DNA of 63,291 nucleotides, filler included, from Octopus bimaculoides (lineage: Eukaryota), in the NCBI RefSeq assembly GCF_001194135.2. It is 6 parts of 6 records of this genome, joined end to end, with 100 filler letters (N's around TTAATTAATTAA, not from the genome) between each part and the next. Parts side by side here need not be neighbours in the genome. Positions count along the whole stretch, not along the records: positions 17,533 to 23,030 come from NC_068997.1; 5 more parts are not named here. One strand, 5' to 3'. Below the pieces are notes generated by a model. That model had not been told where the DNA came from and did no database searches. It saw nothing but the letters and a program-made list of their open reading frames with translations. Of this stretch, positions 17,433 to 23,030 are shown in pieces (positions within the stretch are counted from its first letter, which is position 1; every line of letters begins with the position of its first letter). Position numbers and translations under genes: made by a program.

Positions 17433-17857
17433 NNNNNNNNNNNNNNNNNNNNNNNNNNNNNNNNNNNNNNNNNNNNTTAATTAATTAANNNNNNNNNNNN
17501 NNNNNNNNNNNNNNNNNNNNNNNNNNNNNNNNGATAACAAATAATTACATTTATGGTTAGTTATTTAATGTTTTTCCTGACTAAATATGTTTATGTGTGC
17601 GCGTATGCGTGTGTTTAGGAGAGATGTATGTATATAAAGGTGAACATGTTTGTGCATATGCGTCTGTTGCATGCGTATAAATATAATTTTTAAAGGTTTG
17701 TCTTCCCTGTGTAGTGGTGAGTTTCCCTAAATATCCAAACTTTGGGTCAAAACTTTATCACATTCCTTTTTTTGTTCTTTTGTTTTTTTTTTACTTATTA
17801 TATTTATTTATTTATGTGTTTTAGCCAAGTGGCTGCGGTCATGAAAGAAGCAGTATG

Positions 17858-19678
17858 TTATTTCAGTATTTCAATTTTTATGTTTGGGGACATAGACAAA
17901 TGTTTCGACTCACAAGAACGATAAAAGCGTACATTTCTAGCGCGAAGAATTCTCCACGTTGACAAAATGTGTAAGCCCTTATCTCCATCAACCTTGATAT
18001 GGTCTACATCAGAAAAACCATCTTTGATCCACATGGAACGGAACCTAATAAATGGTAAAAATGTCGAAACGCTGGCCATGGATATATTATACACTAGTAT
18101 CTGAGTCTGTGTTCGATTGCTGATAACTTCAATATTAGCTGATGAATTATCATAATATTGAATGACTGCGATTAAAGTTGGTTCAACTCGGACAATCTTG
18201 AAAACTTCAATGTCTGCGAATGGTCGAAAACTCGACAAATTTGTTGGTCCAAGAATTACAGACGAACCGAAAGGTAACCAGTCAACACCATGAAGTAACG
18301 GTGGAAGACACCGTGCGTTACCATCTTGGTAAAGGACAAACACTTGCGACGTATTACTTGATCCCAGGACACGTTTGCTCAATCGAATGAAATCGATATT
18401 ATCGAATTTAGTGCCTTCCAGAATGACACTCATAGTTTTCGGTCGCCGCCACCAAAAATCAACATTGACGCCCTCTAATATTGTGTTGAGACTTTGATAC
18501 AACGGTTTCACCGTCTCTCCTCGTTCTGGTCGCCTAACTAAACTAATTTCGTCAATAATAACAAGTTGGTCTTCATCCGAAACCAAGATTAGAAATATGG
18601 CATTTATATTACTTTCGGACCATGTGAAATCTGGAATAGACCAAACGCCTTTCAGTGTTCGTGGAGAAAATTTCCTGTGTTGTAATTCCGAAAGTTTGCT
18701 ATTTCTACCATTATAAGTCATATTTATATAAAGTGGTCGAGTAATTTTCTTTAGTTTTACAGTAAAATTCGATCCGATATCAGCATCGATCACGCCACTC
18801 ATCTTACCTTTCAACGGGAAGAATATTATGAATTTGTAGAGTCTTAATTTTGTTAGTCTTAACACAAATGAGTTGATGTTCATCACAACGTTATGTTCGG
18901 GATCAAGTGGTTTACCTTTTAACAGCCAAAGCTGTGACTGAGAAATACTAAAACAATCCTTGAACATTGCACCGCGATTATTAAGCATACTGTTGAATCG
19001 AGGATAGGAAGGAGTGACGCGATATTTCTTTACCGATGCATGAATGAAAGCTATATCAATGTTGTCCTGTTCAGCACATTTGGTCGGGAAACTTCGCTGG
19101 ATTAACGTTACCAGATCAGACCTACGAGTATGATCTTTCTTCACGGGTTCTGCTTTATCCAGTTCCTGAAAACAGCTTAACCTGCATGACATCAAGTCTT
19201 CAGAAATGTAAGGATTGTCCGTCATGATAGTCAAATGATCGATTTCAATTCCTTGTGTCTCGTTCGAATTTATATGAATATCCAAAAAATGAATTCCTTT
19301 TGATAAAAATAAAGGTTTCCTGGCAGGTCCGGAGTCCCGAAATACATTCCACAGTTCGCCACCTTTCGATTGGCCGGATATTGAGAACGACTGCAGTTGT
19401 TGATTATCAATGTTAACAAGAACAACAGTTGCTTTGCCGTCGATTGAATATCGAAATCCCATCATCCGAAGTGAGGAATTATTTGCTATACATAAATCCA
19501 AACGAAGAGTTTTCCCTGGTAATAAATAAACAACTTTCTTGTTAGAAGCATTAGATCGCCTATGGACTTGCAAATTTCCAGGCTGTTTCTCAGCTTCGAA
19601 AATCAATTCGGAAGTTTCTGCTAACAAATATTTTATAGAGAGAAGTAAAAAGAAGATGCTTTTCCAACAAACAAACAT
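17858..19678 (-). CDS. Intronless 606-aa predicted secreted glycoprotein with N-terminal CBM6/CBM35-like module and unassigned C-terminal region
   Basis: 1821-nt uninterrupted ORF of normal complexity. The first ATG is at 19678 with A at -3; the ORF-track start at 19825 is a GTG. Hydrophobic signal-like N-terminus MFVCWKSIFFLLLSIKYLLA. CBM-like pattern FEAE..NASN..V.L..G..RYSIDG..V.V.ID..LWNVF..L.KG.H.L..GIEIDHL. 11 N-glycosylation sequons. AATAAA on the minus strand at 17803-17808. Confidence 0.9.
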   Translation of the reverse strand: MFVCWKSIFFLLLSIKYLLAETSELIFEAEKQPGNLQVHRRSNASNKKVVYLLPGKTLRLDLCIANNSSLRMMGFRYSIDGKATVVLVNIDNQQLQSFSISGQSKGGELWNVFRDSGPARKPLFLSKGIHFLDIHINSNETQGIEIDHLTIMTDNPYISEDLMSCRLSCFQELDKAEPVKKDHTRRSDLVTLIQRSFPTKCAEQDNIDIAFIHASVKKYRVTPSYPRFNSMLNNRGAMFKDCFSISQSQLWLLKGKPLDPEHNVVMNINSFVLRLTKLRLYKFIIFFPLKGKMSGVIDADIGSNFTVKLKKITRPLYINMTYNGRNSKLSELQHRKFSPRTLKGVWSIPDFTWSESNINAIFLILVSDEDQLVIIDEISLVRRPERGETVKPLYQSLNTILEGVNVDFWWRRPKTMSVILEGTKFDNIDFIRLSKRVLGSSNTSQVFVLYQDGNARCLPPLLHGVDWLPFGSSVILGPTNLSSFRPFADIEVFKIVRVEPTLIAVIQYYDNSSANIEVISNRTQTQILVYNISMASVSTFLPFIRFRSMWIKDGFSDVDHIKVDGDKGLHILSTWRILRARNVRFYRSCESKHLSMSPNIKIEILK

Positions 19679-19855
19679 CTTGGGCTTGTTTTTTCGGATG
19701 ATGTCCGGAAAGCAGGAGTGAATTCTTCTTCTTCTCCAGTAGAATCCGTTTAGAAAGTGGTGAGCGAGTTGTGTGTAAGAATTCGCTCTATTGTTTTTAA
19801 CTCTTACAGATATCCCCACACCCACCTCTCTCTTCCTTCGCTGCCAATTTACTCA

Positions 19856-19950
<95 letters not shown>

Positions 19951-21257
19951 ACACATACATACACAAACACAAACACATACGTATACACATACGTATACAA
20001 CACACACACATACACAATACATACACAAACACAAACGTATACACATACGTATACAACACACACACACATACACATACATACACATACATACACATACACA
20101 AACACANNNNNNNNNNNNNNNNNNNNNNNNNNNNNNNNNNNNNNNNNNNNNNNNNNNNNNNNNNNNNNNNNNNNNNNNNNNNNNNNNNNNNNNNNNNNNN
20201 NNNNNNNNNNNNNNNNNNNNNNNNNNNNNNNNNNNNNNNNNNNNNNNNNNNNNNNNNNNNNNNNNNNNNNNNNNNNNNNNNNNNNNNNNNNNNNNNNNNN
20301 NNNNNNNNNNNNNNNNNNNNNNNNNNNNNNNNNNNNNNNNNNNNNNNNNNNNNNNNNNNNNNNNNNNNNNNNNNNNNNNNNNNNNNNNNNNNNNNNNNNN
20401 NNNNNNNNNNNNNNNNNNNNNNNNNNNNNNNNNNNNNNNNTACATACATACATACATACATACAAACACATACATACACATACAAACACATACATACATA
20501 ACACACACACACATACATACACACATACACATACATAGATACACACACATACATAGATACACACATGCATACACACATGCATACATACATACATGCATAT
20601 ACACATGCACGCATACATACATATATACATACATACATACATACATGCATGCATACATACACACAGGCATGCATACATGTATACTTACATGCATGCATAC
20701 ATACATACATGCATACACGCGCACACACACATATATACATACATACATACATACATACATACACGCGCGCACACACATACGCACATACGTATATATACTC
20801 TGACATGCAAGCACCTACATGTATTCTGAGATATTCACACACACACATACACATGCGCACACACACAGTAACACACGTGTACACATTCACAAAGACACAC
20901 AAACCTCTGTGTGTGTGTGTGTGTGTGCGCGCGCATTGCCCTTCAGCAACAACTCATCCTGTACACTGACATTCCTAACAATTTATTTATCAAACTGACA
21001 AAACAGCAACAACAACAACACCACCACCAACTTCACAGGGAAGATCTTAAAGCAATGCACTGAGAGCGCCATTTGTGATCAGGTTTAATGACATTTAAAC
21101 GATGTGACATGTATTTCGCGCTTATTTAAACAGCAGCCACATTACACTCGGTAACTCTCGTTAAATGTCTTTAAAAGTCTTTGCCTATCAAAGACTAAAC
21201 AGGACGATTATTCGGTCATCATTTTCAATCTAGAACTTTCCTGAATTACATCGTTAT

Positions 21258-21314
<57 letters not shown>

Positions 21315-21319
21315 GCTTA

Positions 21320-21448
21320 CAGTCGGATGAATCGACACCAGTACGGATTTTGTTTTTCTTTTAAGGCTAGTACTTATTATATCGGTTCCTTTTGCCGAAC
21401 CGCTAGGTTACGGGGGCATGAACTAACCAACATCGATTGTCAAGCGTA

Positions 21449-21495
<47 letters not shown>

Positions 21496-21630
21496 TTATC
21501 GTCGCTACAGGCTTCTTTCAGTTTCCATCTACAAAATCCACTCACATGATCTTGGTCGGCCCGCGGTTATAGTAGAAGACACTTGCCCCAGATGCTACGC
21601 AGTAGGACCGAACCCGGAACCATGTGGTTT
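21320..21630 (-). mobile_element. SINE family A
   Basis: Tail gccgaaccgctaggttacgg, a (CA)n tract, then head tagtagaagacacttgccc..gaacccggaaccatgtgg. Confidence 0.7.
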
Positions 21631-22689
21631 CTTTATCTTTTTTTACTTATTTCAGGCATTAGATTTCGGCCATGCTGGAGCACCGCCTTGAATTTATATA
21701 CCCTCCAGCCTTCATCAACTGTCTTGGGGAAACAACAAACAAGACGAGGACAAATATCCGTCAATTGTAAATAATGTACATAATTCCTCATCTCTTAAAT
21801 ATAGAACTGAGCGATAAAGTTGTCATAAATTAAAGGGCTGTGAAACTTCGTAGGTATTCATGGCTTCCATTTTAAGGACAACCCTACTCTATAGAATGTT
21901 TAATAAGCTAAACCATAATCATTTATAAAATGATGTATTAATAACGAAGAAATTCAGAAAATTCTTTCGAAGCACAACAATGAAATGTTTGTATGTGTAG
22001 GAGGGGGATGGGTTGTCAGTGCAATACGCATAAGTAACTTGTCAAATAAGAACCTTTATCACGATGTGACAATGTCAAAATATTTTGACAACAAAATACA
22101 AAATACAGTTCTATACATGCATGCGTGTGCGTGCGCGTGCGTGATTTCAAATTTGGACACAAGGCCACCAATTTCAATGGACGGGATAAGTCGATTACAT
22201 CAATCTCCAGTGCTCAGGTGGTACTTAATTTATCGACCCCAAAAGGATGAAAGGTGGAGTCGACCTCGGTAGAATTTGAACCAGAACATAAAGACAGACG
22301 AAATGCCGTTACGTATTTTGTCCAACGTGACAAAGGACAAAAAGACATGAAACCATTTGCAAATAACATGCAATGTTGTTCAGAGTTACTCCCCTTGCTT
22401 ATTCATTGATTCTCAAATTTTGTTTCGATGCATTTTTCACTTGATAATTTTTAGACTAACGGAAATATTAAATTTTAGTTTTAGTCTTTCTACTATAGCT
22501 CCATTCGAATCCAAAGTGATTTATAGGAATGTTAATTTGAATGCGTGATCGCTTTAATTGACTGCCATCTAATTTTATTGACCCCGGAGGGGATCAAAAA
22601 GAAAATCGATCTTTGCAAATTTTGAACTCGGAACGTAAAAAAAGTTGTAACTAGATACCGTACGACAGTACGACAGCGTAACGAAGGAT

Positions 22690-23030
22690 CAATGGGCTTG
22701 CAGCCTGATCCGGGGTAAAATTGCAACGAAAAAGCATGGGAAACCATGCCCCCATGATCCCGGACCACGGGGGGAGAATAAAGGATCAAATAGGGACGGA
22801 AAAAAACGAAACAAACTTGGACCGGAAATGGATAATGAGAAAGGATGCGGTAAAGGATTGGTAGACGAGGAATTCAGCTGCTGCGGAAAGGTGTTTGCTA
22901 GTTACATCGGGCTCAGAATCCACCAAGGGAAGGTATGTCAGAAGAAAGTAATTCAACAGCGCGGGTTGATGAACCGTAAGACGTGTGGCCAGAACCTCCG
23001 GGAAAATAACCACAGCGAGGGACATTCCAC
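22690..23030 (+). mobile_element. 5' end of a HERO-like (REL-endonuclease) non-LTR retrotransposon, cut by gap
   Basis: ORF 22828 reads SCCGKVFASYIGLRIHQGKVC..QR..T..E..HS. This matches the N-terminal C.CGK....GL.IH...C zinc-finger pattern I recall for HERO/R2-like elements. GC-rich leader with CCCCC..GATCCCG..GGGGGGAG motif. Confidence 0.6.

What the first reader, a model, noticed from the sequence alone, without database searches (positions are those of the whole stretch)
17858..19678. Intronless secreted protein: bacterial-style CBM6/35-like module fused to an unassigned ~430-aa region
Seen: a single-exon 606-aa ORF in a genome whose neighbouring gene has kb-scale introns, with a signal-like N-terminus, 11 N-X-S/T sequons, 7 mature Cys and an AATAAA about 50 nt after the stop. 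Known: the FEAE..NAS..RY..W..F..L..G.H..ID pattern is typical of CBM6/CBM35 beta-sandwiches, mostly found on microbial glycan-degrading enzymes. Inference: the beta-rich C-terminal part (TKCAEQDNID, GVNVDFWW, FVLYQDGNAR..DWLPFGSSVILG, RFRSMWIKDGFSDVDH, RSCESKH) has clustered D/H/R/W motifs that look like a conserved functional site, but I cannot place it in a named family. It may be an uncharacterised glycan-binding or glycan-processing effector (digestive, mucus, venom or immune), possibly of retrocopy or horizontal origin. Best candidate for an undescribed system in this window.
Basis: partly seen in the sequence, partly recalled or inferred. Interest (0 to 1): 0.8.

Follow-up and report, generated by a model that had tools for sequence, protein, structure and literature searches.

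The report
Octopus secreted CBM6 protein, unnamed core
This is a real, strongly conserved octopus gene for a secreted protein that joins a sugar-binding module to a large domain that no database names, a domain shared by molluscs and marine bacteria and most likely a new kind of carbohydrate-acting module whose substrate is unknown.

Summary
Window 17858-19678 (minus strand) is a single-exon 606-aa gene of Octopus bimaculoides. It has an N-terminal signal-like helix, 11 sequons (about 5 expected), 7 mature Cys and AATAAA 46 nt after the stop. It is under strong purifying selection (dN/dS 0.08 against O. sinensis).

Residues 22-158 are a true CBM6 relative (hhalign 98.8%, E 1.4e-16). The remainder is a ~280-aa all-beta core (189-244 plus 384-606) interrupted by an inserted beta domain (245-383). 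The core has no Pfam, NCBIfam or PDB sequence match. It nevertheless defines a large family: 1263 cluster representatives.

Many members are ~300-aa secreted proteins from Planctomycetota, Verrucomicrobiota and other bacterial MAGs. In multidomain bacterial members the commonest partner is CBM6. The only significant structural neighbour is E. coli OpgG (GH186 beta-1,2-glucanase; TM about 0.46), and no sequence-level link to it was found.

All named full-length homologues are molluscs, in several paralogue lineages. All seven further animal genes checked are intronless. Eukaryotic members form one clade (98% bootstrap).

Best reading: a secreted glycan-targeted protein whose core is an undescribed carbohydrate-active module of ancient bacterial origin. 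Catalysis and substrate are unproven. Octopus carries a unique D599N change.

The parts
17858..19678 (-). Complete single-exon CDS, 606 aa plus stop (stop codon 17858-17860)
   Evidence: Exact match to O. bimaculoides CM046617.1. dN/dS 0.08 against O. sinensis.
19616..19678 (-). Signal-peptide-like N-terminus (residues 1-21, MFVCWKSIFFLLLSIKYLLAE)
   Evidence: It is the only hydrophobic segment and forms AF2 helix 5-18. Homologues have equivalent hydrophobic N-termini. The cleavage site was not predicted with a dedicated tool.
19205..19615 (-). CBM6-type beta-sandwich (residues 22-158; FEAE...RSNAS...W..F...G.H...IEID)
   Evidence: hhalign 98.8%, E 1.4e-16 against Pfam-validated CBM6 of bacterial homologues. 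Foldseek CBM6E 8j3x, 129 columns, rmsd 3.2. pLDDT about 90.
19115..19204 (-). Linker with the eukaryote-conserved C-x3-C (residues 159-188; C165, C169)
   Evidence: Alignment A1. pLDDT is lower here.
18947..19114 (-). Core module, part 1 (residues 189-244), with the near-invariant S196, C201-A-E203-x-D205-N206, P226 and C242
   Evidence: These columns are shared with ~300-aa bacterial minimal proteins. CAEQDN lies at 19061-19078.
18530..18946 (-). Inserted beta domain (residues 245-383) that splits the core
   Evidence: It is absent from minimal bacterial members and present (160-165 aa) in a bacterial subgroup and in all eukaryotic members. There is no hhalign link to CBM6.
17861..18529 (-). 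Core module, part 2 (residues 384-606), holding W409/W410, Y450, D452, R456, G471/S473/G477, R485, Y508, R547-S548-M549, D557, H593 and P598; N599 stands where D is the rule
   Evidence: Motif coordinates: QVFVLYQDGNAR 18311-18346; FGSSVILG 18248-18271; RFRSMW 18029-18046; RSCESKH 17900-17920; SPNI 17879-17890.
17807..17812 (-). AATAAA polyadenylation-signal hexamer, 46 nt after the stop (a second overlapping copy lies at 17803-17808)

Best explanation
The gene encodes a secreted, N-glycosylated, basic protein with three beta domains.

Shown:
- An N-terminal CBM6-type carbohydrate-binding module.
- A ~280-aa beta-sandwich core that belongs to a large family found in bacteria and marine eukaryotes and has no name in any database searched.
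- An extra beta domain inserted into that core.
- Strong purifying selection on every domain.
- Intronless orthologues and paralogues across molluscs.

Inferred:
- The CBM6 module docks the protein on a polysaccharide or glycoconjugate.
- The core is the working module. It uses a conserved polar cluster (E203, D205, N206, Y450, D452, R456, R485, R547, D557, H593 and position 599) to bind a glycan chain and most likely to cleave or remodel it. The many invariant arginines and the protein's net charge of +19 suggest an anionic glycan.
- The family entered a marine eukaryote lineage from bacteria long ago, from the bacterial subtype that already carried the inserted domain. It then diversified by duplication in molluscs.
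- The Octopus orthologue keeps 30 of 33 family-wide conserved positions but has D599N and Y228F. It may therefore be weakened or converted to binding only.
For: Real, constrained gene:
- (dN/dS 0.082 and 0.066, all domains).

Secretory features:
-.

CBM6 homology:
-. Weak Pfam CBM_6 hits occur in homologues.

Core family:
- 1263 representatives at E<=1e-3 and 349 at E<=1e-30.
- The minimal bacterial form is a signal peptide plus the core.
- All bacterial members carry only 'hypothetical' names and come from Planctomycetaceae, Phycisphaerales, Verrucomicrobiae, Marinimicrobia and Deltaproteobacteria MAGs.
- 33 positions are at least 90% conserved over 85 bacterial and eukaryotic sequences, most of them polar or aromatic.

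Architecture typical of a catalytic module:
- Among 52 multidomain bacterial members the commonest Pfam partner is CBM_6 (5 members, best E 2.6e-26), followed by CBM_35, dockerin, SLH, Ig-like and FG-GAP.
- There are no recognised GH/PL domains apart from beta-helix-type matches (Beta_helix, NosD, DUF1565), each in one member.

Fold:
- The AF2 models are confident (pLDDT 88.4 and 93.2).
- The only significant PDB neighbour of the core is OpgG, a GH186 glycanase (E 2e-4 to 8e-4, prob 1.0, TMq 0.45-0.47).
- This shows such a sandwich can carry a glycosidase site built from Asp, Arg, Tyr and Glu (PMC10514313).

Pseudoenzyme-like pattern:
- Two diverged bivalve paralogues have lost about 10 of the 33 conserved positions, while nearly all other members keep them all.

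Origin:
- The eukaryotic members are monophyletic (98/100 NJ bootstraps).
- They share the inserted domain with one bacterial subgroup.
- All seven further animal genes checked have an uninterrupted CDS.
Against: - No activity, ligand or expression data exist for any member.
- The link to GH186 is at fold level only and is modest (TM about 0.46). Profile-profile comparison with OpgG/OpgD gives probability below 1%.
- I could not inspect model coordinates, so clustering of the conserved residues into one pocket is assumed, not shown.
- The four bacterial gene neighbourhoods examined show no polysaccharide-utilisation context.
- A foraminiferal member is fused to MACPF. This would suit a targeting or binding role as well as a catalytic one.
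- The Octopus protein is the only one of 85 with Asn at position 599.
- The direction of transfer rests on diversity and on a midpoint-rooted NJ tree, not on a rooted ML analysis.
Confidence: 0.5

Rival explanations
1. A non-catalytic lectin or pattern-recognition/adhesion protein. Both the CBM6 module and the core only bind glycans, for example microbial or mucus polysaccharides. The protein would then act in immunity, mucus organisation or the extracellular matrix rather than as an enzyme.
For: - The Octopus orthologues carry D599N and Y228F at near-invariant positions.
- The family has expanded into several paralogue lineages in bivalves and gastropods, some with eroded conserved sites, as seen in immune lectin families.
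- The Bolivina member places the same unit in front of a MACPF pore-forming domain, where a targeting role is natural.
- The only confidently assigned domain is a binding module.
Against: - 33 positions, many of them charged, are conserved from bacteria to molluscs at about 30% overall identity. That is unusual for pure binding modules.
- In bacteria the core occurs alone as a secreted ~300-aa protein. It is also itself decorated with CBM6/CBM35 modules, the place usually taken by a catalytic domain.
Confidence: 0.3
2. An enzyme that acts on something other than a glycosidic bond, for example an esterase, amidase or peptidase using the invariant Ser/His/Asp residues, with the CBM6 module serving only to anchor it to a glycan matrix.
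For: - S473 and S548 are invariant; H593, D452 and D557 are at least 94% conserved.
- No match to any GH or PL family was found.
Against: - There is no similarity to any known hydrolase fold with a Ser-His-Asp triad.
- The only structural neighbour is a glycanase.
- The partner domains are glycan-oriented.
Confidence: 0.1
3. Not a functional host gene: a decaying retrocopy, a recent bacterial insertion or assembly contamination.
For: It is intronless, sits in a gene-poor stretch with no other gene called within 10 kb, and lies next to microsatellites and an assembly gap.
Against: - The ORF is intact and dN/dS is 0.08 with 53 synonymous against 17 nonsynonymous differences.
- Orthologues lie on chromosome-scale scaffolds of O. 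sinensis and Argonauta hians, the latter next to an animal EGF/TSP1 gene.
- GC content is 38%, as in the flanks.
- It has a eukaryotic polyadenylation signal.
- The nearest bacterial relatives are only 23-27% identical.
Confidence: 0.02

Closest known systems
CBM6 (Pfam PF03422) carbohydrate-binding modules of bacterial glycan-degrading enzymes, e.g. Saccharophagus degradans CBM6E (PDB 8j3x)
   Same: Residues 22-158 share the ~130-aa beta-jelly-roll and the sequence pattern (EAE start, S.AS, W..F, G.H, I.ID end). hhalign gives 98.8% against CBM6 modules that pass Pfam's threshold. The structural alignment covers 129 columns at rmsd about 3.2 A.
   Different: The octopus domain itself does not reach any Pfam CBM_6 score. 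It lies N-terminal to the core, whereas bacterial relatives carry CBM6 on the C-terminal side. Conservation of ligand-binding residues and sugar specificity were not assessed.
GH186 / MdoG superfamily (E. coli OpgG and OpgD, beta-1,2-glucanases; PDB 1txk, 8ip2; PMC10514313)
   Same: It is the only significant PDB structural neighbour of the core module (Foldseek prob 1.0, E 2e-4, alignment over about 310 columns). Both are secreted or periplasmic large beta-sandwiches. GH186 shows that this kind of fold can host a glycosidase site built from Asp, Arg, Tyr and Glu.
   Different: TM is only about 0.46 and rmsd is 6-11 A. There is no Pfam MdoG hit in 55 members. hhalign probability is below 1% against OpgG or an OpgG+OpgD profile. 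The OpgG C-terminal domain has no counterpart here. Catalytic residues could not be mapped. The core is about 280 aa.
Animal carbohydrate-active genes regarded as acquired from microbes (e.g. GH5 and GH45 cellulases of nematodes and beetles; PMC3032686, PMC6509783)
   Same: It is a secreted protein with a bacterial-type CBM, a patchy eukaryotic distribution and a very large bacterial family. It shows domestication features: host-like GC content, a polyadenylation signal and purifying selection.
   Different: Those cases involve catalytic families with known activities. Here the working domain has no known activity. The acquisition would be old (shared by cephalopods, gastropods and bivalves, and grouped with an octocoral-labelled and a foraminiferal sequence) and was followed by paralogue radiation.

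Membership tests
CBM6 (PF03422) | Sequence match to the family profile | tested here: inconclusive
   The octopus protein gives no Pfam hit at E<=1. Homologue P0024 scores 17.4 bits against a 28.9-bit cut-off. However, a profile of 30 eukaryotic N-terminal domains matches Pfam-validated CBM6 modules at hhalign 98.8%, E 1.4e-16.
CBM6 (PF03422) | Beta-jelly-roll sandwich of about 120-140 residues | tested here: met
   AF2 predicts strands across residues 23-153 with pLDDT about 90. Foldseek matches CBM6E 8j3x (129 columns, rmsd 3.1-3.4) and MiXBM 7ehg (TMt 0.59).
CBM6 (PF03422) | Demonstrated carbohydrate binding and conserved cleft residues | not testable with these tools
   This needs glycan arrays or ITC on recombinant protein. 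Binding-cleft residues were not mapped.
GH186 / MdoG superfamily (PF04349) | Sequence membership in the MdoG profile | tested here: not met
   None of 55 core-only members hits PF04349 at E<=10. hhalign of core profile A3 gives 0.3% against OpgG and 0.06% against the OpgG/OpgD profile.
GH186 / MdoG superfamily (PF04349) | Fold of the OpgG N-terminal beta-sandwich domain | tested here: inconclusive
   It is the only significant PDB hit (prob 1.0, E 2e-4), but TMq is 0.45-0.47 and rmsd is 6-11 A.
GH186 / MdoG superfamily (PF04349) | Catalytic Asp acid (OpgD D388 / OpgG D361) and Asp base acting through a water chain; beta-1,2-glucanase activity | not testable with these tools
   No residue-level structural alignment or coordinates were available. 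The residues are taken from PMC10514313.
Unnamed 'CAEEDN / YxDGNxR / RSM / SxH' core family (this work) | Match to the family profile over both core halves | tested here: met
   The octopus protein aligns over residues 189-244 and 384-606 with bacterial minimal proteins.
Unnamed 'CAEEDN / YxDGNxR / RSM / SxH' core family (this work) | Retention of the 33 positions that are at least 90% conserved | tested here: inconclusive
   30 of 33 are kept. A223P, Y228F and D599N deviate, and D599N is unique among the 85 sequences.
Horizontally acquired animal gene | Eukaryotic members nested in or sister to a much more diverse prokaryotic family, with patchy eukaryotic distribution | tested here: inconclusive
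   The eukaryote clade has 98% bootstrap support. The family has hundreds of bacterial clusters. The inserted domain is shared with one bacterial subgroup. The tree is NJ and midpoint-rooted, and many eukaryotic sequences lack a taxon label.
Horizontally acquired animal gene | Integrated in the host genome and domesticated | tested here: met
   It lies on chromosome-scale scaffolds in three cephalopods. GC content is host-like, AATAAA is present and dN/dS is 0.07-0.08.

The most novel reading that the evidence does not exclude
The split beta-sandwich core is the catalytic module of an entirely new carbohydrate-active enzyme family (a glycoside hydrolase or lyase, only fold-related to GH186). 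It would be used by marine Planctomycetota, Verrucomicrobiota and relatives on an anionic marine or host glycan. Marine eukaryotes would have captured it once, after which it became a conserved, multi-paralogue secreted enzyme of molluscs.
Probability: 0.35. Interest if true: 0.75.

Novelty: new variant of a known kind. Interest (0 to 1): 0.6.

Why it matters
If the core is catalytic, this locus points to a new CAZyme family with more than a thousand sequence clusters. It occurs in bacteria known for degrading complex marine polysaccharides and in every major mollusc class, yet no database names it and no structure exists. The ~300-aa bacterial members are small, secreted and easy to express, so the question can be tested directly. 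For mollusc biology it adds an intronless, strongly constrained, probably bacterium-derived secreted gene family whose role (digestion, mucus or matrix remodelling, or defence) is open. The family also contains natural 'dead-site' paralogues that would help define the active site.

Tried and rejected
- Pfam, NCBIfam and PDB sequence searches with the single protein and with family profiles found nothing for the core.
- Whole-protein Foldseek gave only low-TM multi-sandwich matches. The minimal bacterial core was therefore modelled and searched separately.
- BFVD, the viral structure library, gave no hit.
- hhalign of the core against OpgG alone and against an OpgG/OpgD profile found no sequence relationship, so GH186 membership is rejected. 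The OpgG homologue search returned only close relatives (at least 70% identity), so that profile was shallow.
- hhalign of the inserted domain against CBM6 and against the N-terminal domain found no link.
- Four bacterial gene neighbourhoods showed no polysaccharide-utilisation loci or other informative context.
- Literature searches by locus names, by 'CBM6 domain-containing protein', and by OpgG-like or HGT-in-mollusc terms found nothing about this family.
- The retrocopy reading was rejected. No intron-bearing parent or paralogue was seen, and every animal member checked is intronless.
- The pseudogene and contamination readings were rejected on dN/dS and on the chromosomal orthologues.
Full report
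**1. Observation**

The piece (17533-23030) holds one long ORF on the minus strand. The first ATG is at 19678 and the stop at 17858-17860, giving 606 aa.
- 11 N-X-S/T sequons, against 5.0 +/- 2.0 in 5000 shuffles of the mature chain (P about 0.005).
- 8 Cys, of which 7 lie beyond the N-terminal hydrophobic segment.
- AATAAA 46 nt after the stop, at 17807-17812.

The only strongly hydrophobic stretch is residues 7-20, which AF2 predicts as a helix. The mature protein is basic, with a net charge of +19.

The exact protein is encoded on Octopus bimaculoides chromosome CM046617.1, with no other gene called within 10 kb.

**2. It is a functional gene**

Orthologues exist in O. sinensis (97% identity) and Argonauta hians (83%), both as uninterrupted CDSs on chromosome-scale scaffolds. 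Nei-Gojobori dN/dS is 0.082 against O. sinensis (53 synonymous and 17 nonsynonymous differences) and 0.066 against Argonauta. Every domain is constrained. GC content is 38%, as in the flanks. Pseudogene, contamination and recent insertion are therefore excluded.

**3. Anatomy**

AF2 with a 38-sequence alignment gives a confident all-beta model (pLDDT 88.4, pTM 0.79). Alignment with bacterial relatives divides the protein as follows:

| Part | Residues |
|---|---|
| Signal-like segment | 1-21 |
| CBM6-type domain | 22-158 |
| Cys-containing linker | 159-188 |
| Core, part 1 | 189-244 |
| Inserted beta domain | 245-383 |
| Core, part 2 | 384-606 |

The bacterial minimal form is a signal peptide followed directly by the two core parts, about 280 aa in all, with no insertion.

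**4. N-terminal domain**

Pfam does not score the octopus domain. Three other results place it in CBM6:
- A profile of 30 eukaryotic N-terminal domains matches CBM6 modules that pass Pfam's threshold in bacterial homologues (P0078, P0082, P0120). hhalign gives 98.8%, E 1.4e-16 over 116 columns.
- Foldseek aligns it to CBM6E at rmsd about 3.2 A.
- UniProt labels the Magallana homologue a CBM6 domain-containing protein.

**5. The core is an unnamed, large family**

No Pfam, NCBIfam or PDB sequence match exists for the octopus protein, for bacterial members or for family profiles.

A profile search of 1.84 billion cluster representatives finds 1263 proteins at E<=1e-3 and 349 at E<=1e-30. The core occurs in proteins of 300 to more than 4000 aa. 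Named bacterial members are all 'hypothetical'. They come from MAGs of Planctomycetaceae, Phycisphaerales, Verrucomicrobiae, Marinimicrobia and Deltaproteobacteria.

Across 85 bacterial and eukaryotic sequences, 33 positions are at least 90% conserved. They include E203, D205, N206, W409/W410, Y450, D452, R456, S473, R485, Y508, R547, S548, D557, H593 and D599, in octopus numbering.

In a census of 52 multidomain bacterial members the commonest Pfam partner is CBM_6 (5 members). Next come CBM_35, FG-GAP, Ig-like domains, dockerin, SLH, PA14 and similar modules. No recognised GH or PL catalytic domain appears, apart from beta-helix-type matches (Beta_helix, NosD, DUF1565), each in one member. 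The core thus sits where a catalytic module normally sits in CAZyme architectures.

**6. Fold of the core**

The minimal Planctomycetaceae member (313 aa) was modelled at pLDDT 93.2. Its only significant PDB neighbours are E. coli OpgG entries (1txk, 8ip2), with prob 1.0, E 2e-4 to 8e-4, TMq 0.45-0.47 and about 310-346 aligned columns. Everything else is noise. BFVD gives nothing.

OpgG and OpgD define GH186, beta-1,2-glucanases with an Asp acid and an Asp base acting through a water chain, supported by Arg, Tyr and Glu (PMC10514313). Profile-profile comparison shows no sequence relationship, with probability below 1%. The protein is therefore not a GH186 member. The resemblance shows only that such a sandwich can be a glycanase.

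**7. Distribution and origin**

All named full-length homologues are molluscs:
- Cephalopods: Octopus and Argonauta, with two sub-lineages.
- Gastropods: Patella, Lottia (three paralogues), Haliotis and Nucella.
- Bivalves: Mytilus, Magallana, Mizuhopecten, Mya, Mactra, Dreissena and unionids.

The exceptions are one sequence labelled Paramuricea clavata (an octocoral) and one from the foraminifer Bolivina argentea, in which the unit is fused to MACPF. A further group of unlabelled eukaryotic sequences carries mucin-like tails.

All seven further animal genes examined are single-exon: Patella, Haliotis, an unlabelled ENA eukaryote, the O. vulgaris paralogue, O. sinensis and Argonauta are the six named or described here.

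An NJ tree on 274 core columns places all eukaryotic sequences in one clade (98 of 100 bootstraps). They share the inserted domain with one bacterial subgroup. This fits one ancient bacterium-to-eukaryote acquisition followed by duplication. It does not fit a retrocopy or an octopus-specific event. The direction of transfer is inferred, not proven.

**8. Function**

The best-supported reading (about 0.5) is a secreted glycan-targeted protein whose core is a carbohydrate-active, probably catalytic, module. The invariant arginines and the basic charge hint at an anionic glycan.

Support also comes from a pseudoenzyme-like pattern. Nearly all members keep 32-33 of the 33 conserved positions, but one Mizuhopecten paralogue and one Magallana paralogue have lost about 10, including E203, D452, R547 or H593.

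The main rival (about 0.3) is a non-catalytic lectin-type protein. Three things favour it: the MACPF fusion, the paralogue expansions, and the Octopus-specific D599N and Y228F changes. D599N is unique among the 85 sequences and is shared with O. sinensis, whereas Argonauta keeps D.

Bacterial neighbourhoods gave no hint of a substrate. The literature holds nothing on the family.

**9. Verdict**

The protein is annotated only as 'uncharacterized'. Its core is a large, undescribed domain family with a fold barely related to any solved structure. Catalysis, substrate, tissue and biological role remain open and can be tested directly.

Noticed in passing
window 19852-20795: A block of (CT)n, (CA)n and (TACA)n microsatellites starts about 170 bp upstream of the start codon. 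It is interrupted by an assembly gap of N at 20107-20440. The long 'ORFs' listed there are repeat artefacts.
   Followed up: partly
window 21261-21309 and 21450-21492: A 49-nt poly-T run and a perfect (AC)21 repeat lie upstream of the gene.
   Followed up: no
window 22828-23030 (+): An ORF cut off by the piece's edge encodes a C2H2-like zinc-finger fragment (FSCCGKVFASYIGLRIHQGK). The Pfam zf-C2H2 match is weak (E 0.007, below the cut-off). It may be part of a transposon or a neighbouring gene.
   Followed up: partly
window 17879-17890 (residues 597-600, SPNI) and residue 228: O. bimaculoides and O. sinensis have Asn at position 599, where 79 of 85 family members have Asp (3 have Glu). Residue 228 is Phe where 81 have Tyr. 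Argonauta keeps D599 and Y228. This may mark weakened or altered function in the genus Octopus.
   Followed up: partly
P0068 (Mizuhopecten yessoensis LOC110464240) and P0296 (Magallana gigas XP_011416968): These paralogues have lost 9-10 of the 33 family-wide conserved positions, including E203K, D452S, R547S and H593Y. This looks like a 'dead-site' paralogue lineage.
   Followed up: partly
P0118 (Bolivina argentea, EukProt EP01084): This foraminiferal protein of 1253 aa carries the CBM6-like domain and the core, followed by a long Pro/Thr-rich linker, a MACPF pore-forming domain and a C-terminal transmembrane segment.
   Followed up: partly
P0105, P0108, P0113, P0136: These proteins of 530-630 aa match only the N-terminal CBM6-like part of the profile, in 3-5 tandem stretches. 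The module therefore also occurs as repeat arrays without the core. Their taxon is unknown.
   Followed up: no
Magallana cluster of P0072; also P0004, P0007, P0064: Many members sit on Logan contigs of about 2.0-2.4 kb. This is close to mRNA size for a 1.85-kb CDS and suggests transcripts from RNA-seq runs in oysters and other molluscs. No such contig was seen for the O. bimaculoides protein itself.
   Followed up: no
Lottia gigantea ESO85406 (P0053) and ESO85408 (P0079): Two paralogues with nearly consecutive accession numbers were each seen on a longest contig of the same length (4,798,402 bp). This suggests a tandem duplication.
   Followed up: no
window residue C457 (within 18311-18346 region, NARCLPP): The mature chain has an odd number of Cys. 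C201/C242 are conserved family-wide, and C63, C165, C169 and C589 are conserved in eukaryotes. C457 is not a conserved Cys position in the family alignment (consensus Leu).
   Followed up: no
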